DNA of 64,000 bases from Haliotis cracherodii (lineage: Eukaryota): NCBI RefSeq assembly GCF_022045235.1, contig NW_027266341.1, positions 53,940,001 through 54,004,000 of the forward strand, given 5' to 3'. The position numbers were made by a program, and so were the translations under genes. The notes below the pieces were generated by a model. It made no database searches, had not been told where the DNA came from, and saw nothing but the letters and a program-made list of their open reading frames with translations. This document shows positions 19,181 to 53,964 of this stretch, piece by piece (positions within the stretch are counted from its first letter, which is position 1; each line of letters begins with the position of its first letter).

Positions 19181-20180
19181 CTATAATAAATGGCCCAGTC
19201 CCTATTTCATCATTTTAGGTCACCGACTTGCTCGTTGATAGATTTTCTCTTTAAGTTAGACAAAGGAATAATTGCTGAATCCTACTTTCATTATCAGTGA
19301 TATGACCGCTATCCCCGTTTTACTTTGTCGAATGAAACAATTTAGGTACTCTGAAGGCCAGTAGAATTTAAGATTTTAGGGGGTTCTTATATAGATTCCA
19401 TACGGTATCGATATTCGGGGTAGCAAATATGTGAGGTTAACGTTTACCATTGATGATCCGTATCAAAGTGAATGCAATTCACGTGCACCATGTTCCGAGT
19501 TATAGCGAACGAAAAACACCAAAACAATTTTTTTCAAACTCCAAACTGATGTTTTGGCCTACCTTGTTTCTTTTTGTGTTGTTATTTTTTTCTGTTGAAT
19601 TTTCAACTCATATCTTCGAAGTTGATAAAGTTAAGATTTTAACTTGAAATTTCAACGTATTCTCGTGTCATGGAAGTTCGATCACTTCCGAAAAGTCGCT
19701 GAATATTCTTAGTGATATTCATATAATCTATTTTTCAAATAGCTTACCTCTAAACTTGTTTATTTATGTCAAACATTTCCGAAATCCAGGTATTTCCACT
19801 GAAATTGACATATTGGCGGCATGGCCGCCCTCTCACTGTCAACAGAAGTGACCAAGAAAAGTATGTATCTTGAAATGTCAACTTAACATTTTGAAATTTC
19901 AGCTTCGTGTTTTGAAATTTCAAGAAAAAACAAGAAGACAAAACAAATGACTCTTAAAGGCGTCCATACGTTTAGCCTGGGGGTTGTGTTCGACCATAAT
20001 AAACCACACGCCGGAAGCTGGCGATGACGCCTCGTTCTGAATCCTCGAACTCCGTAACGTAGTTACCGTTGCCGGTACCGACGTCCCCTTCTGTTTCCAA
20101 CAGAAAAACGATCGCTTTTGCTCCGCTAATACCCACGTTTCGCTCACTGCTGTATCTTTCCAAGTGTGTCTTCTTCCAAG

Positions 20181-21165
20181 ATGAATACAAGGCTTCACAT
20201 TCAAGGTATTTGAGATCACAATTATTCCCATTAACAATATCAAGACGTTAAATTAGACCTGTAATTAGACGTTGTTAGGCAGCAGTATCGGGACTGAAGA
20301 TGGCGGCCGCCATTTGCAATATTGTCTAACTGAACATTTTAGCTTGTAAACTTGACATGGGGTGCTTAGATGAAACCTGTTCGTGCATTATAGTGTCAGA
20401 CGATGTAGTACAGATGTAAGACAACATGTATTACGTGAAAAGCAGCTGTTTGGCCCATGTTATTGGTTAAATTTCGTCTCGCAGCACAGCCTGTATCCCT
20501 ACATACACTTGAACTTCGAGGTGTCAAAGGGCCGAGGTCGAGTGACATATTGTAGCTGTCAGAGCTCGAAACTTGTGACATTTTAAACGTAGTCGTTGCC
20601 GTACATTTAACCTAGCCTATCTTTTGTTTTCTTTTTCAGCTCGGGAGGACATAATTCGCTATTATGGCACTCCTGCGGCTGTGAGTTTGTGGCCGTCTCA
20701 GGATAAGGAGTCCGACTGTGTATGTAGTTTTACATGCCCATCCTATAAATTCTTCCGTCTAGTATAGCTGATTTGTTGCACATTAAGTCTGCCCAGTCCC
20801 TATAATAAAGTGTGATTCGTTTTCTTTGCAAAATTATCCCGTATTTCTGTCTGACTTGACTTCCTTTGTCCCTCCCTCCACCCCTCGATGTGTAGCGTTC
20901 CCTGGCTGTGTCCCCTTCCCGTTGTCCCGACCCCCTGAGCGTCTTCACTCCGTTCTGGGCCCGCCCTGTCTACGGTGAGACGCTCCCCGCCCCCGTCACC
21001 ATCAACCACGCCGCTTACTATCCTGCCCCAAGTGACGACGATGACAGTGACTACTGGGTGTACGAGGACGACGACGACCACAGCTTTGTGGATGACAGAG
21101 AGATTCATCCCCTTAGAAAGGCGCTGACGAGAGCGGCTGCCTTCTTTAGGAAGATCTTCTCTTAG
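20181..21165 (+). CDS. Unrecognised 3-exon gene, copy 1 (111 aa); exons 20181-20205, 20640-20680, 20896-21165
   Basis: CAAG-ATG start; AAG|GTATTT...TTTTCTTTTTCAG; GCT|GTGAGT...pyrimidine tract-TGTAG. Phases 1 and 0 join into one ORF: MNTRLHIQAREDIIRYYGTPAARSLAVSPSRCPDPLSVFTPFWARPVYGETLPAPVTINHAAYYPAPSDDDDSDYWVYEDDDDHSFVDDREIHPLRKALTRAAAFFRKIFS*. Exons are nearly invariant between copies while intron 1 is diverged. Confidence 0.72.
20297..20315. promoter_or_regulatory. Palindromic double YY1-like site in intron 1 (repeated in copies 3-9)
   Basis: AAGATGGCGGCCGCCATTT is two back-to-back YY1 consensus sites. An ETS-like CCGGAAG lies upstream at 20011-20017. Confidence 0.55.
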
Positions 21166-21219
21166 ACTCCTTATCCTTTTAATGTCTGAATGTTTGCAAG
21201 TGGGTGAATGAATGAGCAG

Positions 21220-21536
21220 GTGTATGTATGTATGTATGTGTGCGTTTGTGTGAGAGTAAACATAAGATTGGATGAACATGCATGTGTGTGTATGTATGTG
21301 TGTGTGTGAGAGAGACTGAATGAATATGTATGTTTGTGTGAGAGTAAATGAAAGATTGAATTGGCATGTCTGTCTGTCTGTTTGCATGTATGTGTGTGTG
21401 TTTGTGTTTGAGTGTGAGAGAGTGAATGGGCATGTGTGTATAATGTGTGTATGTATGTTTGTATGTGTGAGAGGGAGAGTGTATGTATGTTAGAGATGAG
21501 AGTTAGAGTGAATGAACGAGCATACATGTATGTGTG

Positions 21537-21577
<41 letters not shown>
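21220..21577. repeat. Compound microsatellite (TATG)n/(TG)n/(TCTG)n/(GA)n, present 3' of every gene copy
   Basis: Seen directly. Equivalent blocks at ~26699-27219, 30251-30829, 33866-34416, 37450-37985, 41140-41630, 44790-45254, 48273-48842 and 51863-52465. Confidence 0.95.
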
Positions 21578-21579
<2 letters not shown>

Positions 21580-22754
21580 ACCATTCCATATACCCGCTCT
21601 TAGTGTATTTTTGGCGTATTTTTAGGCTCACAGTTTTGGCCCAACCTTCAGTTTCCTTTCGGCAAACCTATTGGCTTATTATCATGGCACAAGACCATAT
21701 TTTCTATACAATTTTGGCCCGGTTTTTTTTATCTCCCTTGAGGCATATTACTTTCGACTTTCGGTCATCTTAATAAATGTTTCTGTAATGTATACACAAG
21801 TTGTTTGTTTTCTCTACAGTGTTTCTTCCTTACAGCTTATAATATGTGGGCGACAGCGGCATGGCAATTTAGGCATCTGGCCAAATCCGAAGGCTTCTGA
21901 ACATGAGACATAAATTCATATTGATATTGTTAAAACGCAAAATTTGTCCATATATGGCTTTGCAGCTGTGTCCTTATTTTATGATCTGCACTTCACAGAA
22001 GATTTCTGAATAGGTGTTGTTACGTTAAGATTAGACACTTCTAAATCTTTATGTGGCGGCAGTTGTGACACAGAGGACACCTCACTTGGACACGTTGTTG
22101 TCTGGGGATATTTTATATTTCAATATAATAGCTAATCGGTTCTAATGTAACAATAATTTGGGCTTCCTTTAAAAGGAGTGCGAATCGAGAATTGCCCTCC
22201 TTCTCTAAAACACAAGTGTTGCCACATGGGATATATTACGAGCACTTCACCCAACTAATAGCAATAGTCGGATAAGGGATTGAGAGTGATCTCCCTTCAC
22301 TCTCCTCAGTCTTGGATTTCACCCGTCTTGAGCAACATTATGAACACACAGAAAAGCTGCTTCCAGGGGTCGACTTCAGTGGTTATATTGTACACCAGCT
22401 GATCATACTGGTCCTGGCCAGTACATAAATAATACCTTTTGCACTCATTTTAGCCATTGGTGTGAACATGTCTGTAGTCAACAACTTTAAGTGTAAGGAG
22501 GAAAAAACGCAAGCAACCTGTTATCGCCGAGGACCAATGATTGCCAACTCCCCGTTATGATGCGCACGTGATCGCATCTCGTTTAACTATTGCTCGGTTT
22601 CATTGGAAGAAAGAAATATTTATCCAAAAATGATGAACAAAACTTACTCCTGTGAAGAAATATTAAAAAACAACAACCATATAATCACCTTGCTCAAATA
22701 CAACTTAAGAAGAGACACTCACTCACAACACGATGATGCACATTCAGTTCTGTC

Positions 22755-22932
22755 ATAGCTTACTATCTGTCTGTCAAAATTCCCAAATTACAATTCTAAA
22801 ACCTATTTGAGCTATTTTCCCCCAAAATGCATTACTCTGAAAATATCGTGAAATTCATAGCTTAATTACTATCCGTCTGTCAAATTTCCCAAATTACGAT
22901 TCTAAAACCTATTGGAGCTATTTTTCCAAAAA
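22755..22932 (+). repeat. Local tandem duplication, ~100-bp period, 2 copies
   Basis: CATAGCTTA...CTGTCAAA(A/T)TTCCCAAATTAC(A/G)ATTCTAAAACCTATT(T/G)GAGCTATTTT occurs twice. Confidence 0.8.
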
Positions 22933-23975
22933 CGCTTAACCCTTTATATGTCCCGAAATTCAGAGTACATAGTGTTGAGGATAAACACAAGTAAATCGAA
23001 TTTTCGGAATATTGGTGGACGTCAGTTTGCAGACGACAAATTGATAAAAGCATTTTTCTTATTAACTGTAATGAATATAAACAATGAGTGCGATACCAGA
23101 GAAAATAGATTACGTAATTTGTGTAACTGAAGCAGTGTGTCTGATCACATTCTGTTTTTTTTATGATGGCGATAACTAGTTTATTTGGTCGACGGAAATA
23201 TCTTTTCCCACTGTTTTGATTCCCTGTTGTCGCGTTATAACAGAAATCTACTGATTTTTTTTCCACAGAAAGAAATACGCACATTTGCTCATAGTTTCCC
23301 ACAAGTTAAAATTATTGGCACAGATAACTTTGTACATAAAATATTTCAAAAATAACATGCCGAGGACAAGGGTAACATCAAGTACCATCTTTCAACGTCA
23401 TATGGTATGACGCGGCCCGGGATCGAACCACCGACCGCCAGCTCTCGCGGCAGACGCTCTGTCAACTAGACCATGGAAGCCATAGAGCTTTCGAAGATAT
23501 AAAATTGTTGTATATTTTTTAAAAAGTGGGCGCGCGAGTTCATACTCCACCTGTCTTCAAACTTATGTTTATTCAATGACATCTTTCAACATGTGTGTTA
23601 TCATTGCATGTAAATCAATCTTATGCTTAAATGAGCCGTCACAATGTAAATTGTGAATGACAGTTTGTTGGTTGACATTTGAAATTTTCAGAAATTGAAT
23701 TTGACCTAAACCCATTGATGCTGAGTGAGTGGCCCTTGATTATTTTGAATTTAACATTTCTGTTGGTTATGTCCAACATTACACATGCCGTCTCTGTTCA
23801 TTGTATTTGATTAATATGGGTCAACTTGACATGTCTTTCGTGAAAGTATTTGAGTTGTCGGGAACAAAACACGGACGAACAGTTTGAATATCTTAGAAAT
23901 GGCAGTGGAATAGTCCAAGATATCACATTGCCTTCTTTTACAGACCGAGGTAAAGGTGGCTCAATGGCCTGAGGC

Positions 23976-24110
23976 AAGTTCGGATCCAACTTTTTTTTAT
24001 AATGGAGGGGTCCAATAACAAAATCCTGTCTCAGAGAGGGGTGTGGTTGGTTTGTTTTTTGTTGTCAAAGCAGGAGGGGAGATCTGGATCTCGCACCTTG
24101 ATCCGCCAAT
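23976..24110. mobile_element. Short MITE-like insertion with CGGATCC...GATCCGCC ends
   Basis: Absent from the paralogous site at ~54570; ends form a degenerate inverted repeat. Confidence 0.55.
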
Positions 24111-24383
24111 GGAAGGCGCCGCGATTCGCTGTGCATGCAAAGTTGCGTCCCTTTGACGTGCCAGAAACCAATGATTGTGTGTTCGAATCTCCAATTTACC
24201 CTGGTTGTGTTTCTAGGTTGTCAGCTCCATCTACATCACTTAAGACTTTTCTCTCTTAATAATTAAGCTGACACACTGTGTGATATAACAGAAATAATGT
24301 TCAAAGCGGCGTTGAACCCAGCTCACTCACTCACTAGCTCACAGACTGAGAATGGGGTTGTTCCTGTGTTTCATATGATTGAC

Positions 24384-24555
24384 GGGGCGGTCGGGTAGCC
24401 TAGTGGTTGAAGCGTTCACTCGTCAGGCGTACGCCGAATAATCAGGTTCGATTCCCGACATGGGTACAATGCGTGAAGCCCATTTCTGGTGTCCCCCGCC
24501 GGTATATTGCTGGAATATTGCTAAAAGCGGTGTAAAACCATACTCACTCACTCAC
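24384..24555 (+). mobile_element. Full-length tRNA-derived SINE, family B
   Basis: A-box TAGCCTAGTGG, B-box GGTTCGATTCC, (CTCA)n tail, target-site duplication TCATATGATTGAC / TCATATGGTTGAC. Confidence 0.88.
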
Positions 24556-24660
24556 TCATATGGTTGACTGTGTTTCGTCATACCCCGACGGTGTAGATCG
24601 GTGCTCATGTCACTGGTGTGTCTGGACCAGACTTGATTATTTACAGGTCCACGTGATATA

Positions 24661-37986: not shown

Positions 37987-39976
37987 ACCATTCCATATAC
38001 CCGCTCTTAGCGTATTTTTGGCGTATTTTTAGGCTCACTGTTTTGGCCCGACCTTCAGTTTCCTTTCGGCAAACCTCTTGGTTTATTAGCATGGCACAAG
38101 ACCATACTTTCTATACAATTTTGGCCCGTTTTTGGATCTCCCTTGAGGCATATTACTTTCGACTTTCGGTCATCTGAATAAATGTTTCTGTAATGTATAC
38201 ACAAGTCGTCTGTTTTCTCTACAGTGTTTCTTCCTTACAGCTAATAATATATGGGCGACAGCAGCATCGCAATATTGGCCAAATCCTCAAGATTTCCGAA
38301 CATGTGACATAAATTCATATGGATATTGTTAAAAAGTGAATGCTGCCTCTATATTGCTGTGCTGCTGTGTCCCAATTTCATGATCTGCACTTAGCAGAAG
38401 ATTTCTAAATAGGTGGGGTTACCTTAAGATCAGACACTTCTAAATGTTTATGTGGCGACAATTGTGACACGGGATATTCTCTGAGGACAGCTCTCTGATA
38501 CTTTGTTATCTGGAATAAATTTTATATTCCAATATAATAGCTAATCGTTTCTAATGTAACAATAATCGTGGCTTCCTTTTAAAGGAGTGCGAATCGAGAA
38601 TTGCCTTTCTTCTCTAAAACACAAGTGTCGCCACATGGGATATATTACGAGCACTTCACCCAACTAATAGCAGTAGTCGGACAAGGGGTTGAGAGTGATC
38701 TCCCTTCGCCTCAGTCAATATTGGATTCCACTCGTCTCATCACCTCACTGCTTGTCTTTTGGCCCGTGGTCTTCAGAAATTGCAGAGGGCATGCTTTTAT
38801 ACATAGGCCGAGGCCAGGCGCAAGTAGAAAGCCTATATTGATACCTACTCGTATGCAAGAGTAGATTAATATATATATATGACGTAATATTCGTATCTGG
38901 CATTCTACAAAAATACCTAAATGATACAAGGGGTCTGAATTCTACCCCTGTACGTCCACATCAAGGTTTCCAAAATGGGACGGTCAATAGGATTTCTCTG
39001 ACTGTGATTGTGTGGGTGGCTAGGATTTTTTCAGAAAAAAAATATATTGTCTCCAAAGTTGATTGAAAACTAATTAGGCTTCCATATGTTGGACAAAAAG
39101 AACATGTCGGCCACCAAAAATACGTTGTTGCAAGGTGGGTTTTTGAAAAATGTTTTATTTAGGCTCATTGTTTATAACTGATTTTGCATTTGCAGCTGAA
39201 AAATATCTAGTCTCCATACAAAATCCAACGTCGCCCACTCCCCCTTCCAAAGGAACATGAAATGGTCGGCCCCTCAGGCCTAGTGTAGTAAAAACCAATA
39301 TGCTTGTCATTTATCTTTCTCTCCTATTAGCTATTTTCTGTGGTCATCGTGTTTCCAGATTAGAAATCAAACCAAATAAGAACTGTCGCTGCACACGTTG
39401 GAAAATACCAGTACCATTTAACTTTTATTTTATCCCTGTAGGATAGGGAATAATTCCCAAATCCCACATGGATTATCAGAGATGTGCATTCTTACTAGCC
39501 TGCTAGCCCGTGTCAGTTAGTCGAATGTAAAAGGTATTGTGAAGGTTAGTATAATAGAGGGTCGTTATATGGTATCGCTATTCGGCCTAGCAAACGTTTA
39601 AGGTTAATGTCCATATCAAAGTGAACAAAATTCACCCTGTTTCGAGTAATGGAGGCACGAAAAACACCTAGTTTCACCTGCACATTTTTTTCAAACTCTG
39701 AACTGATGTAGGCAACGTTTCAGTTGTAAGATACAACTTAATCCCGGTGTTCAGACGAAATAAACCCGGCAGTTTTCACCCTTGGCAATGCCATTAGGCT
39801 TTACCACGCCGGAAGCTGGCGATGAGCCTCGTTCTGACTCCTCGAACTCCGTAACGTAGTTACCGTTGCCGTTATCGACGTCCCTTCTGTTTTCAACAGA
39901 AAAACGATCGCTTTTGCTCCGCTGACCTCTACGTTTCGCTCACTGCTGTATCATTCCAAGTGTGTCTTCTTCCAAG

Positions 39977-40961
39977 ATGAATACAAGGCTTCACATTCAA
40001 GGTATTTAAGATCACAATTATTCCCCTTAACAGTATTAACATGCTAAATTAGACGTGAAATTGGTCGTTGTTAGGCAGCAGTATCGGGACTGAAGATGGC
40101 GGCCGCCATTTGCAATTGTCATAACTGAAAATGTTAGATTGTAAACTTGACATGTGGTTCTCAGATGAAACCTGTTCGTACATTATAGCGTCGGGCGATG
40201 TTGTACAGATGTAAGATAACCCGTTTTCCGTGAAAGGGAGCTGTTTGGCCCATTTTATTGGTTAAATGTCGTCTTGCAGCACAGCCTGTAACCCTACATA
40301 CACTTGGACTTCGAGGTGTCAAAGGGCCGAGGTCGAGTGTCATACTGTAGCTGTCAGAAGTCATGAATTGTGATTTTTTGAACGTAGCCGTCGGCGTACA
40401 TTTAACTGAGGCTAGCTTTCGTTTTTCTTTTTCAGCTCGGGAGGACATAATTCGCTATTATGGCACTCCTGCGGCTGTGAGTTTGTGGCCGTCTCAGGAT
40501 GAGGAGTCCGACTGTGTATGTAGTTTTACTTGCCCACCCTATAAGTTCTTCCGTCTAGTATAGCTGATTTGTTGCACATTAAGTCTGCCCAGTCCCTATA
40601 ATAAAGTGTGATTCGTTTTCTATGCAAAAGTATCCCGTATTTCTGTCTGACTTGACTTCCTTTGTCCCTCCCTCCACCCCTCGATGTGTAGCGTTCCCTG
40701 GCTGTGTCCCCTTCCCGTTGTCCCGACCCCCTGAGCGTCTTCACTCCGTTCTGGGCCCGCCCTGTCTACGGTGAGACGCTCCCCGCCCCTGTCACCATCA
40801 ACCACGCCGCTTACTATCCTGCCCCAAGTGACGACGATGACAGTGACTACTGGGTGTACGAGGACGACGACGACCACAGCTTTGTGGATGACAGAGAGAT
40901 TCATCCCCTTAGAAAGGCGCTGACGAGAGCGGCTGCCTTCTTTAGGAAGATCTTCTCTTAG
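39977..40961 (+). CDS. Unrecognised 3-exon gene, copy 6; exons 39977-40001, 40436-40476, 40692-40961
   Basis: Same structure; splice sites intact. Confidence 0.72.
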
Positions 40962-40999
40962 ACTCCTTATCCTTTTAATGTCTGAATGTGTGCAAGTGA

Positions 41000-41136
41000 N
41001 NNNNNNNNNNNNNNNNNNNNNNNNNNNNNNNNNNNNNNNNNNNNNNNNNNNNNNNNNNNNNNNNNNNNNNNNNNNNNNNNNNNNNNNNNNNNNNNNNNNN
41101 NNNNNNNNNNNNNNNNNNNNNNNNNNNNNNNNNNNN
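41000..41136. other. Assembly gap (N run) replacing the (TATG)n tract of copy 6
   Basis: 137 N between GCAAGTGA and AATATAAG. Confidence 0.99.
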
Positions 41137-41547
41137 AATATAAGTTTGAATGAACATGCATGTGTGTGTATGTATATGTGTGTGAGAAAGAGAGACTGAA
41201 TGAATATGTATGTTTGTGTGTGTGTGTAATGTGTGCGTGTGTGTGAGAGTAAATGAAAGATTGAATTGGCATGTCTGTCTGTTTCTGTCTGTATGCATGT
41301 ATGTGTGTGTATTTGTGTGTGAGTGTGTGTGTGTATTGTGTGAGTGTGTGTGAGAGTAAATGAAAGATTGAATTGGCATGTCTGTCTGTCTGTCTGTATG
41401 CATGTATGTGTGTGTATTTGCGTGTGAGTGTGAGAGAGTGAATGAGCATGTATGCATAATAATGTGTGTATGTATGTTTGTATGTATGAGAGGGAGAGTG
41501 TATGTATGTTAGAGGTGAGAGTTAGAGTAAATGAACGAGCATACATG

Positions 41548-41630
<83 letters not shown>

Positions 41631-43622
41631 CTACCATTCCATATACCCGCTCTTAGCGTATTTTTGGCGTATTTTTAGGCTCACTGTTTTGGCCCGACCT
41701 TCAGTTTCCTTTCGGCAAACCTCTTGGTTTATTAGCATGGCACAAGACCATACTTTCTATACAATTTTGGCCCGTTTTTGGATCTCCCTTGAGGCATATT
41801 ACTTTCGACTTTCGGTCATCTGAATAAATGTTTCTGTAATGTATACACAAGTCGTCTGTTTTCTCTACAGTGTTTCTTCCTTACAGCTAATAATATATGG
41901 GCGACAGCAGCATCGCAATATTGGCCAAATCCTCAAGATTTCCGAACATGTGACATAAATTCATATGGATATTGTTAAAAAGTGAATGCTGCCTCTATAT
42001 TGCTGTGCTGCTGTGTCCCAGTTTCATGATCTGCACTTAGCAGAAGATTTCTAAATAGGTGGGGTTACCTTAAGATCAGACACTTCTAAATGTTTATGTG
42101 GCGACAATTGTGACACGGGATATTCTCTGAGGACAGCTCTCTGATACTTTGTTATCTGGAATAAATTTTATATTCCAATATAATAGCTAATCGTTTCTAA
42201 TGTAACAATAATCGTGGCTTCCTTTTAAAGGAGTGCGAATCGAGAATTGCCTTTCTTCTCTAAAACACAAGTGTCGCCACATGGGATATATTACGAGCAC
42301 TTCACCCAACTAATAGCAGTAGTCGGACAAGGGGTTGAGAGTGATCTCCCTTCGCCTCAGTCAATATTGGATTCCACTCGTCTCATCACCTCACTGCTTG
42401 TCTTTTGGCCCGTGGTCTTCAGAAATTGCAGAGGGCATGCTTTTATACATAGGCCGAGGCCAGGCGCAAGTAGAAAGCCTATATTGATACCTACTCGAAT
42501 GCAAGAGTAGATTAATATATATATATGACGTAATATTCGTATCTGGCATTCTACAAAAATACCTAAATGATACAAGGGGTCTGAATTCTACCCCTGTACG
42601 TCCACATCAAGGTTTCCAAAATGGGACGGTCAATAGGATTTCTGTGACTGTGAGTGTGTGGGTGGCTAGGATTTTTTCAGAAAAAAAATATATTGTCTCC
42701 AAAGTTGATTGAAAACTAATTAGGCTTCCATATGTTGGACAAAAAGAACATGTCGGCCACCAAAAATACGTTGTTGCAAGGTGGGTTTTTGAAAAATGTT
42801 TTATTTAGGCTCATTGTTTATAACTGATTTTGCATTTGCAGCTGAAAAATATCTAGTCTCCATACAAAATCCAACGTCGCCCACTCCCCCTTCCAAAGGA
42901 ACATGAAATGGTCGGCCCCTCAGGCCTAGTGTAGTAAAAACCAATATGCTTGTCATTTATCTTTCTCTCCTATTAGCTATTTTCTGTGGTCATCGTGTTT
43001 CCAGATTAGAAATCAAACCAAATAAGAACTGTCGCTGCACACGTTGGAAAATACCAGTACCATTTAACTTTTATTTTATCCCTGTAGGATAGGGACTAAT
43101 TCCCAAATCCCACATGGATTATCAGAGATGTGCATTCTTACTAGCCTGCTAGCCCGTGTCAGTTTGTCGAATGTAAAAGGTATTGTGAAGGTTAGTATAA
43201 TAGAGGGTCGTTATATGGTATCGCTATTCTGCCTAGCAAACGTTTAAGGTTAATGTCCATATCAAAGTGAACAAAATTCACCCTGTTTCGAGTAATGGAG
43301 GCACGAAAAACACCTAGTTTCACCTGCACATTTTTTTCAAACTCTGAACTGATGTAGGCAACGTTTCAGTTGTAAGATACAACTTAATCCCGGTGTTCAG
43401 ACGAAATAAACCCGGCAGTTTTCACCCTTGGCAATGCCATTAGGCTTTACCACGCCGGAAGCTGGCGATGAGCCTCGTTCTGACTCCTCGAACTCCGTAA
43501 CGTAGTTACCGTTGCCGTTATCGACGTCCCTTCTGTTTTCAACAGAAAAACGATCGCTTTTGCTCCGCTGACCTCTACGTTTCGCTCACTGCTGTATCAT
43601 TCCAAGTGTGTCTTCTTCCAAG

Positions 43623-44607
43623 ATGAATACAAGGCTTCACATTCAAGGTATTTAAGATCACAATTATTCCACTTAACAGTATTAACATGCTAAATTAGAC
43701 GTGAAACTGGTCGTTGTTAGGCAGCAGTATCGGGACTGAAGATGGCGGCCGCCATTTGCAATTGTCATAACTGAAAATGTTAGATTGTAAACTTGACATG
43801 TGGTTCTCAGATGAAACCTGTTCGTACATTATAGTGTCGGGCGATGTTGTACAGATGTAAGATAACCCGTTTTCCGTGAAAGGGAGCTGTTTGGCCCATT
43901 TTATTGGTTAAATGTCGTCTTGCAGCACAGCCTGTAACCCTACATACACTTGGACTTCGAGGTGTCAAAGGGCCGAGGTCGAGTGTCATACTGTAGCTGT
44001 CAGAAGTCATGAATTGTGATTTTTTGAACGTAGCCGTCGGCGTACATTTAACTGAGGCTAGCTTTCGTTTTTCTTTTTCAGCTCGGGAGGACATAATTCG
44101 CTATTATGGCACTCCTGCGGCTGTGAGTTTGTGGCCGTCTCAGGATGAGGAGTCCGACTGTGTATGTAGTTTTACATGCCCACCCTATAAGTTCTTCCGT
44201 CTAGTATAGCTGATTTGTTGCACATTAAGTCTGCCCAGTCCCTATAACAAAGTGTGATTCGTTTTCTATGCAAAAGTATCCCGTATTTCTGTCTGACTTG
44301 ACTTCCTTTGTCCCTCCCTCCACCCCTCGATGTGTAGCGTTCCCTGGCTGTGTCCCCTTCCCGTTGTCCCGACCCCCTGAGCGTCTTCGCTCCGTTCTGG
44401 GCCCGCCCTGTCTACGGTGAGACGCTCCCCGCCCCTGTCACCATCAACCACGCCGCTTACTATCCTGCCCCAAGTGACGACGATGACAGTGACTACTGGG
44501 TGTACGAGGACGACGACGACCACAGCTTTGTGGATGACAGAGAGATTCATCCCCTTAGAAAGGCGCTGACGAGAGCGGCTGCCTTCTTTAGGAAGATCTT
44601 CTCTTAG
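43623..44607 (+). CDS. Unrecognised 3-exon gene, copy 7 (T->A variant); exons 43623-43647, 44082-44122, 44338-44607
   Basis: Same structure; VFTP->VFAP. Confidence 0.72.
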
Positions 44608-44645
44608 ACTCCTTATCCTTTTAATGTCTGAATGTGTGCAAGTGA

Positions 44646-44786
44646 NNNNNNNNNNNNNNNNNNNNNNNNNNNNNNNNNNNNNNNNNNNNNNNNNNNNNNN
44701 NNNNNNNNNNNNNNNNNNNNNNNNNNNNNNNNNNNNNNNNNNNNNNNNNNNNNNNNNNNNNNNNNNNNNNNNNNNNNNNNNNNNNN
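44646..44786. other. Assembly gap (N run) replacing the (TATG)n tract of copy 7
   Basis: 141 N at the same unit position as the first gap. Confidence 0.99.
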
Positions 44787-45187
44787 AATATAAGTTTGAA
44801 TGAACATGCATGTGTGTGTATGTATATGTGTGTGAGAAAGAGAGACTGAATGAATATGTATGTTTGTGTGTGTGTGTAATGTGTGCGTGTGTGTGAGAGT
44901 AAATGAAAGATTGAATTGGCATGTTTGTCTGTTTCTGTCTGTATGCATGTATGTGTGTGTATTTGTGTGAGTGTGTGTGTGTGTATTGTGTGAGTGTGTG
45001 TGAGAGTAAATGAAAGATTGAATTGGCATGTCTGTCTGTCTGTCTGTATGCATGTATGTGTGTGTATTTGCGTGTGAGTGTGAGAGAGTGAATGAGCATG
45101 TATGCATAATAATGTGTGTATGTATGTTTGTATGTGTGAGAGGGAGAGTGTATGTATGTTAGAGGTGAGAGTTAGAGTAAATACATG

Positions 45188-45256
<69 letters not shown>

Positions 45257-47234
45257 ACCATTCCATATACCCGCTCTTAGCGTATTTTTGGCGTATTTTT
45301 AGGCTCACTGTTTTGGCCCGACCTTCAGTTTCCTTTCGGCAAACCTCTTGGTTTATTAGCATGGCACAAGACCATACTTTCTATACAATTTTGGCCCGTT
45401 TTTGGATCTCCCTTGAGGCATATTACTTTCGACTTTCGGTCATCTGAATAAATGTTTCTGTAATGTATACACAAGTCGTCTGTTTTCTCTACAGTGTTTC
45501 TTCCTTACAGCTAATAATATATGGGCGACAGCAGCATCGCAATATTGGCCAAATCCTCAAGATTTCCGAACATGTGACATAAATTCATATGGATATTGTT
45601 AAAAAGTGAATGCTGCCTCTATATTGCTGCGCTGCTGTGTCCCAATTTCATGATCTGCACTTAGCAGAAGATTTCTAAATAGGTGGGGTTACCTTAAGAT
45701 CCGACACTTCTAAATGTTTATGTGGCGACAATTGTGACACGGGATATTCTCTGAGGACAGCTCTCTGATACTTTGTTATCTGGAATAAATTTTATATTCC
45801 AATATAATAGCTAATCGTTTCTAATGTAACAATAATTGTGGCTTCCTTTTAAAGGAGTGCGAATCGAGAATTGCATTTCTTCTCTAAAACACAAGTGTCG
45901 CCGCATGGGATATATTACGAGCACTTCACCCAACTAATAGCAGTAGTCGGACAAGGGGTTGAGAGTGATCTCCCTTCGCCTCAGTCAATATTGGATTCCA
46001 CTCGTCTCATCACCTCACTGCTGGTCTTTTGGCCCGTGGTCTTCAGAAATTGCAGAGGGCATGCTTTTATACATAGGCCGAGGCCAGGCGCAAGTAGAAA
46101 GCCTATATTGACACCTACTCGTATGCAAGAGTAGATTAATATATATATATGACGTAATATTCGTATCTGGCATTCTACAAAAATACCTAAATGATACAAG
46201 GGGTCTGAATTCTACCCCTGTACGTCCACATCAAGGTTTCCAAAATGGGACGGTCAATAGGATTTCTCTGACTGTGAGTGTGTGGGTGGCTAGGATTTTT
46301 TCAGAAAAAAAATATATTGTCTCCAAAGTTGATTGAAAACTAATTAGGCTTCCATCTGTTGGACAAAAAGAACATGTCGGCCACCAAAAATACGTTGTTG
46401 CAAGGTGGGTTTTTGAAAAATGTTTTATTTAGGCTCATTGTTTATAACTGATTTTGCATTTGTAGCTGAAAAATATCTAGTCTCCATACAAAATCCAACG
46501 TCGCCCACTCCCCCTTCCAAAGGAACATGAAATGGTCGGCCCCTCAGGCCTAGTGTAGTAAAAGCCAATATGCTTGTCATTTATCTTGATTTCCTATTAG
46601 CTAATTTCTGTGGTCATCGTGTTTCCAGATTTGAAATCAAACCAAATAAGAACTGTGGAAAATACCAGTACCATTTAACTTTTATTTTATCCCTGTAGGC
46701 TAGGGAATAATTCCCAAATCCCACATGGATTATCAGAGATGTGCATTCTTACTAGCCTGCTAGCCCATGTCAGTTTGTCGAATGTAAAAGGTATTGTGAA
46801 GGTTAGTATAATAGAGGGTCGTTATATGGTATCGCTATTCGGCCTAGCAAACGTTTAAGGTTAATGTCCATATCAAAGTGAACAAAATTCACCCTGTTTC
46901 GAGTAATGGAGGCACGAAAAACACCTAGTTTCACCTGCACATTTTTTTCAAACTCTGAACTGATGTAGGCAACGTTTCAGTTGTAAGATACAACTTAATC
47001 CCGGTGTTCAGACGAAATAAACCCGGCAGTTTTCACCCTTGGCAATGCCATTAGGCTTTACCACGCCGGAAGCTGGCGATGAGCCTCGTTCTGACTCCTC
47101 GAACTCCGTAACGTAGTTACCGTTGCCGTTATCGACGTCCCTTCTGTTTTCAACAGAAAAAACGATCGCTTTTGCTCCGCTGACCTCTACGTTTCGCTCA
47201 CTGCTGTATCATTCCAAGTGTGTCTTCTTCCAAG

Positions 47235-48219
47235 ATGAATACAAGGCTTCACATTCAAGGTATTTAAGATCACAATTATTCCACTTAACAGTATTAACAT
47301 GCTAAATTAGACGTGAAATTGGTCGTTGTTAGGCAGCAGTATCGGGACTGAAGATGACGGCCGCCATTTGCAATTGTCATAACTGAAAATGTTAGATTGT
47401 AAACTTGACATGTGGTTCTCAGATGAAACCTGTTCGTACATTATAGTGTCGGGCGATGTTGTACAGATGTAAGATAACCCGTTTTCCGTGAAAGGGAGCT
47501 GTTTGGCCCATTTTATTGGTTAAATGTCGTCTTGCAGCACAGCCTGTAACCCTACATACACTTGGACTTCGAGGTGTCAAAGGGCCGAGGTCGAGTGGCA
47601 TACTGTAGCTGTCAGAAGTCATGAATTGTGATTTTTTGAACGTAGCCGTCGGCGTACATTTAACTGAGGCTAGCTTTCGTTTTTCTTTTTCAGCTCGGGA
47701 GGACATAATTCGCTATTATGGCACTCCTGCGGCTGTGAGTTTGTGGCCGTCTCAGGATGAGGAGTCCGACTGTGTATGTAGTTTTACATGCCCACCCTAT
47801 AAGTTCTTCCGTCTAGTATAGCTGATTTGTTGGACATTAAGTCTGCCCAGTCCCTATAATAAAGTGTGATTCGTTTTCTATGCAAAAGTATCCCGTATTT
47901 TTGTCTGACTTGACTTCCTTTGTCCCTCCCTCCACCCCTCGATGTGTAGCGTTCCCTGGCTGTGTCCCCTTCCCGTTGTCCCGACCCCCTGAGCGTCTTC
48001 ACTCCGTTCTGGGCCCGCCCTGTCTACGGTGAGACGCTCCCCGCCCCTGTCACCATCAACCACGCCGCTTACTATCCTGCCCCAAGTGACGACGATGACA
48101 GTGACTACTGGGTGTACGAGGACGACGACGACCACAGCTTTGTGGATGACAGAGAGATTCATCCCCTTAGAAAGGCGCTGACGAGAGCGGCTGCCTTCTT
48201 TAGGAAGATCTTCTCTTAG
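47235..48219 (+). CDS. Unrecognised 3-exon gene, copy 8; exons 47235-47259, 47694-47734, 47950-48219
   Basis: Same structure; splice sites intact; one half of the YY1-like palindrome is mutated (GATGACGG). Confidence 0.7.
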
Positions 48220-48278
48220 ACTCCTTATCCTTTTAATGTCTGAATGTGTGCAAGTGAGTGAATGAATGAGCATGTATG

Positions 48279-48309
<31 letters not shown>

Positions 48310-48753
48310 GTATGTGTGCGTTTGTGTGAGTGTAAATATAAGTTTGAATGAACATGCATGTGTGTGTATGTATATGTGTGTGAGAAAGAGAGACTGAATG
48401 AATATGTATGTTTGTGTGTGTGTGTAATGTGTGAGTGTGTGTGAGAGTAAATGAAAGATTGAATTGGCATGTCTGTCTGTTTCTGTCTGCATGCATGTAT
48501 GTGTGTGTATTTGTGTGTGAGTGAGTGTGTGTGTGTATTGTGTGAGTGTGTGTGAGAGTAAATGAAAGATTGAATTGGCATGTCTGTCTGTCTGTCTGTC
48601 TGTATGCATGTATGTGTGTGTATTTGCGTGTGAGTGTGAGAGAGTGAATGAGCATGTATGCATAATAATGTGTGTATGTATGTTTGTATGTGTGAGAGGG
48701 AGAGTGTATGTATGTTAGAGGTGAGAGTTAGAGTAAATGAACGAGCATACATG

Positions 48754-48845
<92 letters not shown>

Positions 48846-50823
48846 TACCATTCCATATACCCGCTCTTAGCGTATTTTGGCGTATTTTTAGGCTCACTGT
48901 TTTGGCCCGACCTTCAGTTTCCTTTCGGCAAACCTCTTGGTTTATTAGCATGGCACAAGACCATACTTTCTATACAATTTTGGCCCGTTTTTGGATCTCC
49001 CTTGAGGCATATTACTTTCGACTTTCGGTCATCTGAATAAATGTTTCTGTAATGTATACACAAGTCGTCTGTTTTCTCTACAGTGTTTCTTCCTTACAGC
49101 TAATAATATATGGGCGACAGCAGCATCGCAATATTGGCCAAATCCTCAAGATTTCCGAACATGTGACATAAATTCATATGGATATTGTTAAAAAGTGAAT
49201 GCTGCCTCTATATTGCTGCGCTGCTGTGTCCCAATTTCATGATCTGCACTTAGCAGAAGATTTCTAAATAGGTGGGGTTACCTTAAGATCCGACACTTCT
49301 AAATGTTTATGTGGCGACAATTGTGACACGGGATATTCTCTGAGGACAGCTCTCTGATACTTTGTTATCTGGAATAAATTTTATATTCCAATATAATAGC
49401 TAATCGTTTCTAATGTAACAATAATTGTGGCTTCCTTTTAAAGGAGTGCGAATCGAGAATTGCATTTCTTCTCTAAAACACAAGTGTCGCCGCATGGGAT
49501 ATATTACGAGCACTTCACCCAACTAATAGCAGTAGTCGGACAAGGGGTTGAGAGTGATCTCCCTTCGCCTCAGTCAATATTGGATTCCACTCGTCTCATC
49601 ACCTCACTGCTGGTCTTTTGGCCCGTGGTCTTCAGAAATTGCAGAGGGCATGCTTTTATACATAGGCCGAGGCCAGGCGCAAGTAGAAAGCCTATATTGA
49701 CACCTACTCGTATGCAAGAGTAGATTAATATATATATATGACGTAATATTCGTATCTGGCATTCTACAAAAATACCTAAATGATACAAGGGGTCTGAATT
49801 CTACCCCTGTACGTCCACATCAAGGTTTCCAAAATGGGACGGTCAATAGGATTTCTCTGACTGTGAGTGTGTGGGTGGCTAGGATTTTTTCAGAAAAAAA
49901 ATATATTGTCTCCAAAGTTGATTGAAAACTAATTAGGCTTCCATCTGTTGGACAAAAAGAACATGTCGGCCACCAAAAATACGTTGTTGCAAGGTGGGTT
50001 TTTGAAAAATGTTTTATTTAGGCTCATTGTTTATAACTGATTTTGCATTTGTAGCTGAAAAATATCTAGTCTCCATACAAAATCCAACGTCGCCCACTCC
50101 CCCTTCCAAAGGAACATGAAATGGTCGGCCCCTCAGGCCTAGTGTAGTAAAAGCCAATATGCTTGTCATTTATCTTGATTTCCTATTAGCTAATTTCTGT
50201 GGTCATCGTGTTTCCAGATTTGAAATCAAACCAAATAAGAACTGTGGAAAATACCAGTACCATTTAACTTTTATTTTATCCCTGTAGGCTAGGGAATAAT
50301 TCCCAAATCCCACATGGATTATCAGAGATGTGCATTCTTACTAGCCTGCTAGCCCATGTCAGTTTGTCGAATGTAAAAGGTATTGTGAAGGTTAGTATAA
50401 TAGAGGGTCGTTATATGGTATCGCTATTCGGCCTAGCAAACGTTTAAGGTTAATGTCCATATCAAAGTGAACAAAATTCACCCTGTTTCGAGTAATGGAG
50501 GCACGAAAAACACCTAGTTTCACCTGCACATTTTTTTCAAACTCTGAACTGATGTAGGCAACGTTTCAGTTGTAAGATACAACTTAATCCCGGTGTTCAG
50601 ACGAAATAAACCCGGCAGTTTTCACCCTTGGCAATGCCATTAGGCTTTACCAAGCCGGAAGCTGGCGATGAGCCTCGTTCTGACTCCTCGAACTCCGTAA
50701 CGTAGTTACCGTTGCCGTTATCGACGTCCCTTCTGTTTTCAACAGAAAAAACGATCGCTTTTGCTCCGCTGACCTCTACGTTTCGCTCACTGCTGTATCA
50801 TTCCAAGTGTGTCTTCTTCCAAG

Positions 50824-51808
50824 ATGAATACAAGGCTTCACATTCAAGGTATTTAAGATCACAATTATTCCACTTAACAGTATTAACATGCTAAATTAGA
50901 CGTGAAATTGGTCGTTGTTAGGCAGCAGTATCGGGACTGAAGATGGCGGCCGCCATTTGCAATTGTCATAACTGAAAATGTTAGATTGTAAACTTGACAT
51001 GTGGTTCTCAGATGAAACCTGTTCGTACATTATAGTGTCGGGCGATGTTGTACAGATGTAAGATAACCCGTTTTCCGTGAAAGGGAGCTGTTTGGCCCAT
51101 TTTATTGGTTAAATGTCGTCTTGCAGCACAGCCTGTAACCCTACATACACTTGGACTTCGAGGTGTCAAAGGGCCGAGGTCGAGTGGCATACTGTAGCTG
51201 TCAGAAGTCATGAATTGTGATTTTTTGAACGTAGCCGTCGGCGTACATTTAACTGAGGCTAGCTTTCGTTTTTCTTTTTCCGCTCGGGAGGACATAATTC
51301 GCTATTATGGCACTCCTGCGGCTGTGAGTTTGTGGCCGTCTCAGGATGAGGAGTCCGACTGTGTATGTAGTTTTACATGCCCACCCTATAAGTTCTTCCG
51401 TCTAGTATAGCTGATTTGTTGGACATTAAGTCTGCCCAGTCCCTATAATAAAGTGTGATTCGTTTTCTATGCAAAAGTATCCCGTATTTTTGTCTGACTT
51501 GACTTCCTTTGTCCCTCCCTCCACCCCTCGATGTGTAGCGTTCCCTGGCTGTGTCCCCTTCCCGTTGTCCCGACCCCCTGAGCGTCTTCACTCCGTTCTG
51601 GGCCCGCCCTGTCTACGGTGAGACGCTCCCCGCCCCTGTCACCATCAACCACGCCGCTTACTATCCTGCCCCAAGTGACGACGATGACAGTGACTACTGG
51701 GTGTACGAGGACGACGACGACCACAGCTTTGTGGATGACAGAGAGATTCATCCCCTTAGAAAGGCGCTGACGAGAGCGGCTGCCTTCTTTAGGAAGATCT
51801 TCTCTTAG
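50824..51808 (+). pseudogene. Gene copy 9: exon-2 acceptor mutated (CAG->CCG)
   Basis: TTTCTTTTTCCG|CTCGGG at 51271-51288 versus TTTTTCAG|CTCGGG in the other copies. Skipping the 41-nt exon would frameshift. A ~200-bp deletion follows the (GA)n tract. Confidence 0.6.
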
Positions 51809-52033
51809 ACTCCTTATCCTTTTAATGTCTGAATGTGTGCAAGTGAGTGAATGAATGAGCAGGTATGTATGTATGTATGTATGTATGTATGTATGTATGT
51901 ATGTATGTATGTATGTATGTATGTATGTATGTATGTATGTGTGCGTTTGTGTGAGAGTAAATATAAGTTTGAATGAACATGCATGTGTGTGTATGTATAT
52001 GTGTGTGAGAAAGAGAGACTGAATGAATATGTA

Positions 52034-52069
<36 letters not shown>

Positions 52070-52384
52070 GTGTGTGTGTGTGTGAGAGTAAATGAACGAT
52101 TAAATTGGCATGTCTGTCTGTCTGTCTGTATGCATGTATGTGTGTGTATTTGTGTGTGTGTGTGTGTATTGTGTGAGTGTGTGTGAGAGTAAATGAAAGA
52201 TTGAATTGGCATGTATGTCTGTCTGTCTGTCTGTATGCATGTATGTGTGTGTATTTGTGTGTGAGTGTGAGAGAGTGAATGAGCATGTATGTATATTAAT
52301 GTGTGTATGTATGTTTGTATGTGTGAGAGGGAGAGTGTATGTATGTTAGAGATGAGAGTTAGAGTGAATGAACGAGCATACATG

Positions 52385-52467
<83 letters not shown>

Positions 52468-53241
52468 ACCATACACAAGTCGTCTGTTTTCTCTACAGTG
52501 TTTCTTCCTTACAGCTAATAATAATTGGGCGACAGCAGCATCGCAATATTGGCCAAATCCTCAAGATTTCCGAACATGTGACATAAATTCATATGGATAT
52601 TGTTAAAAGTGAATGCTGCCTCTATATTGCTGTGCTGCTGTGTCCCAATTTCATGATCTGCACTTAGCAGAAGATTTCTAAATAGGTGGGGTTACCTTAA
52701 GATCCGACACTTCTAAATGTTTATGTGGCGACAATTGTGACACGGGATATTCTCTGAGGACAGCTCTCTGATACTTTGTTATCTGGAATAAATTTTATAT
52801 TCCAATATAATAGCTAATCGTTTCTAATGTAACAATAATTGTGGCTTCCTTTTAAAGGAGTGCGAATCGAGAATTGCCTTTCTTCTCTAAAACAGAAGTG
52901 TCGCCAAATGGGACCAGTAGTTTAGAAAATTGGAGTGGGCCAAAAATGGCCTTGATGGTTCCTTGCCCTTTTCTGAAAAAGTCCCAGCCTCGCACAACCG
53001 ATTTAATATGTAACCGATTTGTGTCTGAGATACTATCCGCAACGTTATTTTGAGCTCACTCACTCACCCACCTTGGCGTGCAGTTATTCATAACACAACT
53101 AATTTATTCATAAAAGATGTGACTTCTCAATTTTGGTGTAGTCATGTTGTTTAGATATACTGAACTGTTCAGTATAATTATGTCACCAAACGAGTTATTA
53201 GTTGTTCTGTTGTGATAGGTTTCCTTTTGTTATCCCCCATG

Positions 53242-53748
53242 CAGAGCTCCAGATAAGCTGCGTATCTGCGTAAAATACGCATCAGACATGCAGAAATACG
53301 CAGTAAAATAAAATCCAAGCGTATCAAATACGCAACGAACATTTACAGATACGCTACAAAAATAAAATTTGTGCGTATCATCAAAATATTGTGAAGTAAC
53401 CCTGCGTATTCGATTAGCAAATCAGCAACTTATTTTGAAATTATAAACGGGCATTCCGTCAACCTTGCCAAACTCCACAATGACAGTTACATCATGATCA
53501 TTTGCCATCACACTTTCTTGTGGAAGTATCGTGGTAGTTTTGAGTCCTATAAAGCTCTCAAAACCACACGACACCAGTTTGCAGGGACTTGATGAATAGT
53601 GTTTTTAAATATTTAACTTAAATACGAACATGTGTAAAAACTAGTGAGTAACAGAAATTTGAATACCCAGATAGAATTACTGATACCCAATGATTTTAAA
53701 ATGCATGGGTAAAATACCCACAACACCAAGAGCTTATCTGGAGCTCTG
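53242..53748. mobile_element. Non-autonomous DNA transposon with 18-bp perfect TIRs (P- or hAT-like CAGAG terminus)
   Basis: CAGAGCTCCAGATAAGCT ... AGCTTATCTGGAGCTCTG. Subterminal ATACGC/GCGTAT repeats on the left and ATACCC repeats on the right. No clear TSD. Confidence 0.85.
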
Positions 53749-53835
53749 GCCTTTAGAGCTTTCGAGGTGGTGAGGTGACGCAGTTTAACATGGACACCCC
53801 ACTCAAACACGATGTAATGACTCCGAGCCGACCAG

Positions 53836-53942
53836 GGCCCCGTTCCACATAGCAATCTTAGCGCTACGATTGTCGTAAGTCAATGTTAAAGTATGGAAGT
53901 TATGATCCCCTTAGCGCTACGATCACTTTGTGGAACGGGGTC
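53836..53942. mobile_element. Short palindromic MITE nested in a family C SINE
   Basis: GGCCCCGTTCCACA...TGTGGAACGGGGTC with internal CTTAGCGCTA repeats; related to 60243-60349. Confidence 0.75.
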
Positions 53943-53964
53943 GAGTACTTGTTTTATCGACCCC

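What the first reader, a model, noticed from the sequence alone, without database searches (positions are those of the whole stretch)
20181..51808. Hidden three-exon orphan gene amplified to nine tandem copies
Seen: the repeated unit is more than a macrosatellite. It has an ATG in CAAG-ATG context, a 25-nt coding exon, a 41-nt exon and a 270-nt exon, joined by GT-AG introns with pyrimidine tracts. The phases (1, 0) fit exactly and give a 111-aa ORF. The ORF track shows only the last exon (as a GTG-started 85-aa ORF) and exon 2 buried in a spurious ORF. Seven of nine copies are intact, and six of those seven encode the identical protein. I recognise no family for it. Inference: a lineage-specific gene under recent dosage amplification. 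Young orphan-gene arrays in animals are often germline-, immunity- or conflict-related, but the sequence does not say which applies here.
Basis: partly seen in the sequence, partly recalled or inferred. Interest (0 to 1): 0.9.

Follow-up and report, generated by a model that had tools for sequence, protein, structure and literature searches.

The report
Abalone-only small gene in tandem arrays

Summary
There are nine units (array 20007-52913). Copy 2 lacks exon 1. Copy 9 has CG instead of AG before exon 2. Both N gaps start 38 nt after the stop codons of copies 6 and 7 and do not touch coding sequence.

The intron 2 donor is misplaced. A distal GTATGT, 39 nt downstream, is invariant, and those 39 nt evolve as coding sequence (pN/pS 0.08). 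This gives 124 aa, which matches RefSeq models exon by exon. No read joint confirmed intron 2 splicing; contigs retain it.

The gene is not hidden. RefSeq lists it as "uncharacterized protein" in Haliotis cracherodii, H. rufescens and H. asinina. It is not limited to nine copies: 208 exon 2 motif hits and at least 150 stop-free exon 3 copies lie in arrays on seven contigs. It is not young: dS is 0.62 between subfamilies and dN/dS is 0.13-0.20.

The protein is acidic, mostly disordered, has no signal peptide and matches no known family.

This scan already reached the same conclusion for this family on other DNA (s1-841666, s1-829593).

The parts
20007..52913 (+). Whole array. It has a diverged edge copy 1 (20007-22328, 82-89% to the unit), an unrelated 3.6-kb stretch (22329-25926), then copies 2-9 (25927-52913), which are 97-100% alike.
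   Evidence: blastn of unit 29671-33285 against the window
20181..21165 (+). Copy 1 gene. Exons are 20181-20205, 20640-20719 and 20896-21165. It is intact, has an E-to-K change in exon 2, and matches RefSeq protein P0010 exon by exon.
26119..26644 (+). Copy 2. It is truncated at the 5' end at 25927, so exon 1 is missing. Exons present are 26119-26198 and 26375-26644. Exon 3 has a G-to-S change. RefSeq models it from an ATG inside the intron (P0011, 140 aa).
29043..29135 (+). Conserved promoter-proximal block of copy 3, at -169 to -76 from the ATG. It repeats in every full unit.
   Evidence: The two subfamilies are 74-76% identical here, against about 21% further upstream.
29212..30196 (+). Copy 3 gene (reference copy). 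Exon 1 is 29212-29236, intron 1 is 29237-29670, exon 2 is 29671-29750 (80 nt), intron 2 is 29751-29926, and exon 3 is 29927-30196 including the stop.
   Evidence: intron 1 joint in reads
32827..33811 (+). Copy 4 gene. Exons are 32827-32851, 33286-33365 and 33542-33811. It is intact and identical to copy 3.
36411..37395 (+). Copy 5 gene. Exons are 36411-36435, 36870-36949 and 37126-37395. It is intact and identical to copy 3.
39977..40961 (+). Copy 6 gene. Exons are 39977-40001, 40436-40515 and 40692-40961. It is intact and identical to copy 3. The N gap 41000-41136 begins 38 nt after its stop.
43623..44607 (+). Copy 7 gene. Exons are 43623-43647, 44082-44161 and 44338-44607. It is intact with a T-to-A change in exon 3. 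The N gap 44646-44786 begins 38 nt after its stop.
47235..48219 (+). Copy 8 gene. Exons are 47235-47259, 47694-47773 and 47950-48219. It is intact and identical to copy 3.
50824..51808 (+). Copy 9 gene. Exons are 50824-50848, 51283-51362 and 51539-51808. The coding sequence is identical to copy 3, but the acceptor before exon 2 is CG, not AG. The unit ends at 52913 (unit position 1815).

Best explanation
What it is. The 3.6-kb repeat is a tandem array of complete transcription units of a gene family restricted to abalones (Haliotis). Each unit has a conserved promoter block and three coding exons of 25, 80 and 270 nt. These encode a 124-aa protein of 14 kDa and pI 4.9.

The protein. It has no signal peptide or hydrophobic segment. 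It is mostly disordered, with three invariant Trp/aromatic-acidic motifs, a 24-residue acidic tract (net charge -12), and a C-terminal basic amphipathic helix.

How it is maintained. The window holds one of at least 15 such arrays (about 200 gene copies in all). Within an array, and between this array and an inverted twin about 600 kb away, copies differ by about 1% in non-coding DNA. I infer that unequal crossing-over and gene conversion cause this. Purifying selection keeps the protein.

Inferred function (low confidence). Many copies supply a high dose of an abundant intracellular protein. It would act through its short linear motifs and charge-segregated tail, as a binding or charge-buffering partner of basic proteins or membranes.

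Shown versus inferred. Shown: gene structure, intron 1 splicing, constraint, copy number, taxonomic range. Inferred: homogenisation mechanism, dosage rationale, molecular role.
For: Transcription and splicing:
- A GT..AG joint skipping exactly the 434-nt intron 1 appears in contigs of 4 of 4 runs, under four coded organism and study labels.

Gene structure:
- The distal donor GTATGT and a YAG acceptor are present in 23 of 23 paralogues.
- Intron 2 length varies from 166 to 340 nt.
- Retaining intron 2 gives a stop within 8-41 codons in every paralogue.
- The 39-nt exon 2 extension has pN/pS 0.08, and a 3-nt in-frame indel separates the subfamilies.

Constraint:
- Exon 3 dN/dS is 0.13-0.20 at dS up to 0.62.
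- All 150 scored exon 3 copies, at 73-100% identity, are free of stops.
- Against a C12 array, exon 2 differs at 0 of 80 positions, exon 3 by 4% and the introns by about 10%.

Promoter:
- The block at -169 to -76 is 74-76% conserved between subfamilies whose upstream DNA is otherwise unalignable.

Copy number and range:
- The exon 2 motif has 208 hits against 0 for the control pattern.
- RefSeq models of 124 aa exist in three Haliotis species.
- An HMM search of 1.84 billion cluster representatives found only Haliotis proteins as credible hits.

Protein features:
- AlphaFold2 gives mean pLDDT 52.8, and the only helix of 4 or more residues is at 107-123.
- There is no Pfam or PDB match.
Against: - No read joint for intron 2 was found at either donor. 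Contigs run through intron 2 unbroken (X1 29669-30249, X2 29721-30250). Splicing of intron 2 therefore rests on conservation and on RefSeq models, not on reads I saw.
- All four runs also cover the spacer at low depth, so unspliced or read-through RNA, or some DNA, is present.
- The runs are labelled 'RNA?' only by a guess.
- There is no peptide evidence.
- Tissue, stage and function are unknown.
- The functional sentence is inference from composition alone.
Confidence: 0.85

Rival explanations
1. Exon 2 would be 41 nt, and the GTGAGT at 29712 would be the donor used.
For: The GT at 29712 sits in a good consensus (GTGAGT) in all nine window copies. Using it keeps the reading frame. It could be a minor alternative 5' splice site in this subfamily.
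Against: The GT is missing in 17 of 17 subfamily-B paralogues, where the codon GTG is deleted, and it reads CTGAGT in one C1 array. The 39 nt it would remove have pN/pS 0.08. H. asinina proteins keep this segment. All RefSeq models use the distal donor. No joint 29711>29927 was seen.
Confidence: 0.05
2. The functional output is mainly an RNA that retains intron 2. This would be a long non-coding RNA or a roughly 50-aa peptide ending inside intron 2, and exon 3 would no longer be translated.
For: Contigs in X1 and X2 run from exon 2 through intron 2 into exon 3 with no break, and no intron 2 joint was listed.
Against: Exon 3 has dN/dS 0.13-0.20 and no stop in 150 copies. Donor and acceptor are invariant in 23 of 23 paralogues. 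Contigs drop rarer paths and show presence, not absence (tool note). X4 and X6 show a dip in summed contig depth over intron 2 relative to both exons.
Confidence: 0.07
3. It is a non-functional macrosatellite. The ORF would be a recent relic carried along by array homogenisation, and transcription would be noise.
For: Within-array identity is so high (about 99%) that intact ORFs inside one array prove little. Two of nine copies are defective.
Against: Constraint is seen between arrays and subfamilies that are 20-60% diverged at synonymous sites. The promoter block is conserved. The family is shared with H. asinina.
Confidence: 0.03

Closest known systems
RefSeq 'uncharacterized protein' models of Haliotis cracherodii, H. 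rufescens and H. asinina (for example XP_071087489.1, XP_071087611.1, XP_048243251.1, XP_067685017.1)
   Same: It is the same gene family. P0010 equals copy 1 exon by exon. P0006 and P0011 equal other window copies from exon 2 onward. The 124-aa isoform uses exon 1, the 80-nt exon 2 and exon 3.
   Different: These are automatic predictions with no name, paper or function. The 140-aa isoform starts at an ATG inside intron 1 that occurs only in the window-type array among the 23 paralogues sampled. It is probably an artefact of unspliced RNA or of copies that lack exon 1.
Gene-bearing macrosatellites and ampliconic gene arrays in vertebrates, such as D4Z4/DUX4, TSPY, CT47 and RS447/USP17 (recalled from general knowledge, not tested here)
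   Same: Both have kilobase-scale head-to-tail units that each hold a complete ORF. Both show high within-array identity and occur at several loci, some in inverted orientation.
   Different: The protein is unrelated. This family is spread over seven contigs with about 200 copies. Each unit contains spliced introns. No link to germline expression is shown.
FITZAP (sp6), the abalone acrosomal disordered acidic protein (PMC6952181)
   Same: Both are abalone-restricted, small, acidic and intrinsically disordered, with a poly-Asp tract.
   Different: FITZAP has two exons, a signal peptide and an N-terminal poly-Asp. This protein has three exons, no signal peptide or hydrophobic stretch and an internal acidic tract. 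No direct sequence comparison with FITZAP was made, so it is not filed as a member.

Membership tests
Haliotis 124-aa 'uncharacterized protein' family (RefSeq) | Protein identity over all three exons | tested here: met
   Exon 3 is 99-100% identical to cluster members. The exon 2 and exon 1 translations equal P0010.
Haliotis 124-aa 'uncharacterized protein' family (RefSeq) | Exon structure of 25 + 80 (or 77) + 270 (or 267) nt, with GT-AG introns of phases 1 and 0 | tested here: met
   Exon 2, exon 3 and the intron 2 splice sites were found in 23 of 23 paralogues, and exon 1 in 21 of them.
Gene-bearing macrosatellite / tandem gene array | Head-to-tail kilobase units, each with a complete transcription unit | tested here: met
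   Nine units, of which seven have all exons and splice sites. The promoter block repeats in each full unit.
Gene-bearing macrosatellite / tandem gene array | Units are transcribed and spliced | tested here: inconclusive
   The intron 1 joint was seen in 4 of 4 runs. The intron 2 joint was not seen. The runs are contigs whose RNA status is a guess.
FITZAP (sp6) | Signal peptide, two exons, N-terminal poly-Asp | tested here: not met
   The highest 12-residue Kyte-Doolittle hydropathy is 0.79, the gene has three exons, and the acidic tract lies at residues 81-104 (PMC6952181 through).
Transposable-element gene | A transposase, reverse transcriptase, integrase or other TE domain | tested here: not met
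   There are no Pfam hits even at E-value thresholds of 1 to 10. Copies lie in ordered tandem arrays, not dispersed.

The most novel reading that the evidence does not exclude
The family is an abalone-specific ampliconic gene whose arrays sit in inverted pairs (C78 53.32-53.37 Mb on the minus strand against this window on the plus strand, and a plus/minus pair on C1). The arrays of the C78 pair exchange sequence with each other, as in the palindromes that hold germline or conflict genes in other animals. The zwitterionic disordered protein would be made in very large amounts in gametes or early embryos. It would pack or neutralise basic partners, as an intracellular counterpart of the FITZAP principle.
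Probability: 0.12. Interest if true: 0.7.

Novelty: new member of a known kind. Interest (0 to 1): 0.33.

Why it matters
The finding shows that a sizeable part of the abalone 'macrosatellite' DNA is really a constrained, lineage-restricted gene family of about 200 copies, with its own conserved promoter. That is useful for annotation: the 124-aa model should be used, the 140-aa and chained nine-repeat models are suspect, and the 111-aa model is wrong. It is also a tractable case for studying how tandem gene arrays are kept uniform while the protein stays under selection. The function is unknown. The value is limited because the gene is already in RefSeq and the same family was already worked out twice in this scan.

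Tried and rejected
Searches that found nothing useful:
- Pfam on exon 3 and on the full RefSeq proteins gave no hits.
- A PDB profile search gave only a chance hit at E 0.85.
- The ESM Atlas gave scores of 0.76 or less to viral hypothetical proteins, which is not meaningful.
- The HMM search of 1.84 billion representatives gave, besides Haliotis, a soil-metagenome repeat protein (P0030, E 9e-9 summed over 9 repeats sharing one short motif) and two weaker hits. I treat these as chance.
- AlphaFold2 on a 12-sequence alignment gave pLDDT 52.8, too low for a fold search, so none was run.
- Rfam found no family in the window.
- Paper searches for LOC identifiers and for peptide strings found nothing relevant.

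Ideas rejected:
- FITZAP identity, on gene structure and the lack of a signal peptide.
- The 140-aa isoform start, because it is not conserved.

Tools and limits:
- Only the one read-laying run returned contigs, not raw reads, so intron 2 usage and tissue could not be settled.

Joined sequences:
- I did not build or search the spliced product from the window. Exons were searched by reference, and RefSeq proteins returned by the tools stood in for the whole protein.
- There was one exception. I sent a 30-nt pattern spanning a joint observed in the reads (29761>29912) to the window's own genome, to ask whether that form exists as DNA. It does not.
- I did not search the exon 1-exon 2 junction as DNA.
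Full report
**Observation**

The window is G000:C78:53940001-54004000 of a 1.18-Gb, 80-contig assembly. Protein matches point to black abalone, Haliotis cracherodii.

Per copy:
- The ATG sits in a CAAG-ATG context, and a 25-nt coding exon is followed by GTATTT.
- Intron 1 is 434 nt and ends in a pyrimidine tract plus AG.
- Exon 3 is 270 nt and follows a TAG acceptor.
- Copy 2 has no exon 1.
- Copy 9 has CG for AG before exon 2.

blastn of one unit against the window shows the array's layout:
- The array runs from 20007 to 52913.
- Copy 1 is a diverged edge copy (82-89% to the unit).
- 22329-25926 is unrelated DNA.
- Copy 2 begins at 25927, inside intron 1.
- Copies 2-9 are 97-100% alike, differing mostly in microsatellite length.

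**Assembly gaps**

Both N runs (41000-41136 and 44646-44786) start 38 nt after the stop codons of copies 6 and 7. They replace unit positions 565-669, the (GTAT)n tract, and the flanks are in register with the unit. No coding or splice claim touches them, and I did not fill them.

**Gene model**

I fetched 22 paralogous loci from other arrays. The results were as follows.
- In all 17 copies of the diverged subfamily B the codon GTG is deleted in frame, so no GT exists at that position. In one C1 array the site reads CTGAGT.
- GTATGT, 39 nt downstream (29751 in copy 3), is present in 23 of 23 sequences. So is a YAG acceptor in front of exon 3.
- Intron 2 varies from 166 to 340 nt.
- Reading through intron 2 meets a stop within 8-41 codons in every copy.
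- Between subfamilies, the 39-nt segment has pN/pS 0.08 and the first 13 in-frame codons of exon 2 have 0.21. The segment therefore evolves as coding sequence, not as intron.

The exons are thus 25 + 80 + 270 nt, giving 124 aa. That is exactly the RefSeq 124-aa isoform. P0010 (XP_071087489.1) equals copy 1 exon by exon, including its E-to-K change.

The 140-aa RefSeq isoform (P0006; P0011 for copy 2) starts at an ATG inside intron 1. Among the sampled paralogues, only the window-type array has that ATG. I regard it as an annotation artefact.

Under the 124-aa model the copies sort as follows:
- Copies 3, 4, 5, 6 and 8 are identical.
- Copy 1 has E to K.
- Copy 7 has T to A.
- Copy 2 has G to S and lacks exon 1.
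- Copy 9 has the broken acceptor.

**RNA evidence**

The look-up of sequencing runs listed 20 holders from 10 studies and seven coded organisms. None is on record as RNA. The small contig sets (59-143 million letters) are guessed to be RNA.

Laying four of them on 27250-30250 gave these results:
- A joint skipping exactly 434 nt with GT..AG ends (29236|29671) appears in all four runs.
- No joint was listed for intron 2 at either donor.
- Contigs run unbroken through intron 2 (X1 29669-30249, X2 29721-30250).
- In X4 and X6 the summed contig depth dips over intron 2 relative to both exons. The tool warns that such depth cannot rank parts of a gene.
- The X2 contig ends at 29721, 30 nt before the distal donor. 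A k=31 assembly-graph branch at 29750|29751 would produce this, but that is indirect.
- Two odd joints were listed: 29761>29912 (TA..CA, in X4 and X6) and 29757>29956. The first does not exist as DNA in this genome. Both are unexplained.
- The whole spacer has low coverage, so unspliced or read-through RNA, or some DNA, is present.

Intron 1 splicing is shown. Intron 2 splicing is inferred from conservation and from RefSeq models.

**Constraint and family size**

- Exon 3 as a protein query found at least 150 scored matches (237 candidates) in the window's own genome. Identity is 73-100%, every match has an open 88-89-aa frame, and none has a stop. They lie in arrays on C78, C12, C1, C56, C34, C45 and C2.
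- A 31-nt exon 2 motif has 208 hits, against 0 for the reversed control.
- Sixty-six copies belong to the window's subfamily A, in seven arrays on C78, C12 and C1. The rest belong to subfamily B.
- Exon 3 dN/dS is 0.20 between subfamilies (dS 0.62), 0.135 within B and 0.126 within A.
- Against a C12 array, introns differ by about 10%, exon 3 by 4% and exon 2 by 0 of 80 positions.
- Among near-identical copies, non-coding DNA differs by about 1%. Exon differences are rare: 0 or 1 per 375 nt in most copies.
- A block at -169 to -76 from the ATG (29043-29135 in copy 3) is 74-76% identical between the subfamilies. DNA further upstream is at chance level, about 21%.
- From general knowledge, this block contains a CCGGAA core (ETS-like), a TGACG half-site (CRE-like), two CCGTT cores (MYB-like) and a short palindrome. 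These are resemblances only.

**Age and range**

- H. asinina proteins (120-122 aa) are of the subfamily-B type.
- H. rufescens proteins each pair best with one particular H. cracherodii array type: window type, C1 type, or C12/C78-55.6 type. The array types therefore predate that species split.
- The profile search of 1.84 billion cluster representatives found only Haliotis proteins as credible hits.
- The family is taxonomically restricted but not young, and the nine copies here are not a private recent burst.

**Array dynamics**

- A second array of 14 copies lies about 600 kb away on the opposite strand (C78:53.32-53.37 Mb). It differs from the window copies by about 1% in non-coding DNA, no more than window copies differ from each other.
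- C1 also has a plus/minus pair of arrays.
- Copy 1 plus its right flank is collinear with copy 9 plus the array's right flank, at 73-94% identity. An older duplication of 'gene plus flank' therefore preceded the growth of the 3.6-kb-unit array.
- In copy 1, intron 1 is 13.6% diverged, but exon 2, intron 2 and exon 3 together differ by only 7 of 526 positions. This suggests a conversion tract in addition to selection.

**Protein**

- It is 14.2 kDa with pI 4.9, and the highest 12-residue hydropathy is 0.79, so there is no signal peptide or membrane span.
- Residues 81-104 have net charge -12.
- Residues 105-124 have net charge +5, with hydrophobic moment 0.61.
- AlphaFold2 gives mean pLDDT 52.8, and the only helix of 4 or more residues is at 107-123.
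- Pfam, the PDB profile search and the Atlas gave no informative match.
- It is not FITZAP, which has two exons, a signal peptide and an N-terminal poly-Asp (PMC6952181).

**Verdict**

The repeat is a real, constrained, spliced, abalone-restricted gene family kept in tandem arrays. One splice site, the claim that the gene is hidden, the copy count and the claim that it is young are wrong.

My functional statement is inference from composition: a high dose of a disordered, intracellular, charge-segregated binding protein.

Earlier follow-ups in this scan (s1-841666 and s1-829593) reached the same family-level conclusion on other arrays. What I add:
- the paralogue evidence against the 111-aa donor;
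- the conserved promoter block;
- the inverted twin array;
- the retained-intron caveat.

Noticed in passing
window 1-11967: A 202-bp satellite fills the left end of the window. Its orientation flips at about 7022: the consensus for 7022-11967 is the reverse complement of that for 1-7026. These are two inverted satellite blocks lying about 8 kb left of the gene array.
   Followed up: no
window 24659-25175: A roughly 515-bp interspersed element, with terminal inverted repeats of about 38 nt, sits in the stretch between copies 1 and 2. The first look gave 14186 candidates genome-wide, and the scored copies are 95-98% identical. It looks like a recently active MITE.
   Followed up: partly
window 21792-25805 versus 52471-55230: Copy 1 plus its right flank is collinear with copy 9 plus the array's right flank, at 73-94% identity. 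An older duplication of 'gene plus flank' therefore preceded the expansion of the 3.6-kb unit.
   Followed up: partly
G000:C78:53321070-53366640 (minus strand); also C1:34.88 Mb (plus) and C1:35.29-35.31 Mb (minus): Arrays come in inverted pairs. The C78 twin, with 14 copies about 600 kb away, differs from the window array by only about 1% in non-coding DNA, the same as within the array.
   Followed up: partly
P0029 = XP_071118469.1, on the 73.4-Mb contig (C34): This RefSeq model chains nine exon 3 repeats into a 655-aa protein. It uses a GAG|GTT site inside exon 3 of subfamily B. It reflects either read-through splicing between units or an annotation artefact. The window's subfamily has GAG ATT at that position, so there is no GT.
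   Followed up: no
window 29761>29912 and 29757>29956: Contigs of runs X4 and X6 skip 150 nt (ends TA..CA), and one X6 contig skips 198 nt, inside intron 2. The 150-nt form is not present as DNA in this genome. The cause is unknown.
   Followed up: partly
window 30251-30830 and the same place in each unit: Every unit carries (GTAT)n, (TG)n, a 107-nt duplicated block and (GA)n right after the stop codon. The length differences between units, and both assembly gaps, lie here. The first AATAAA is about 826 nt after the stop, so the 3' UTR probably runs through these microsatellites.
   Followed up: no
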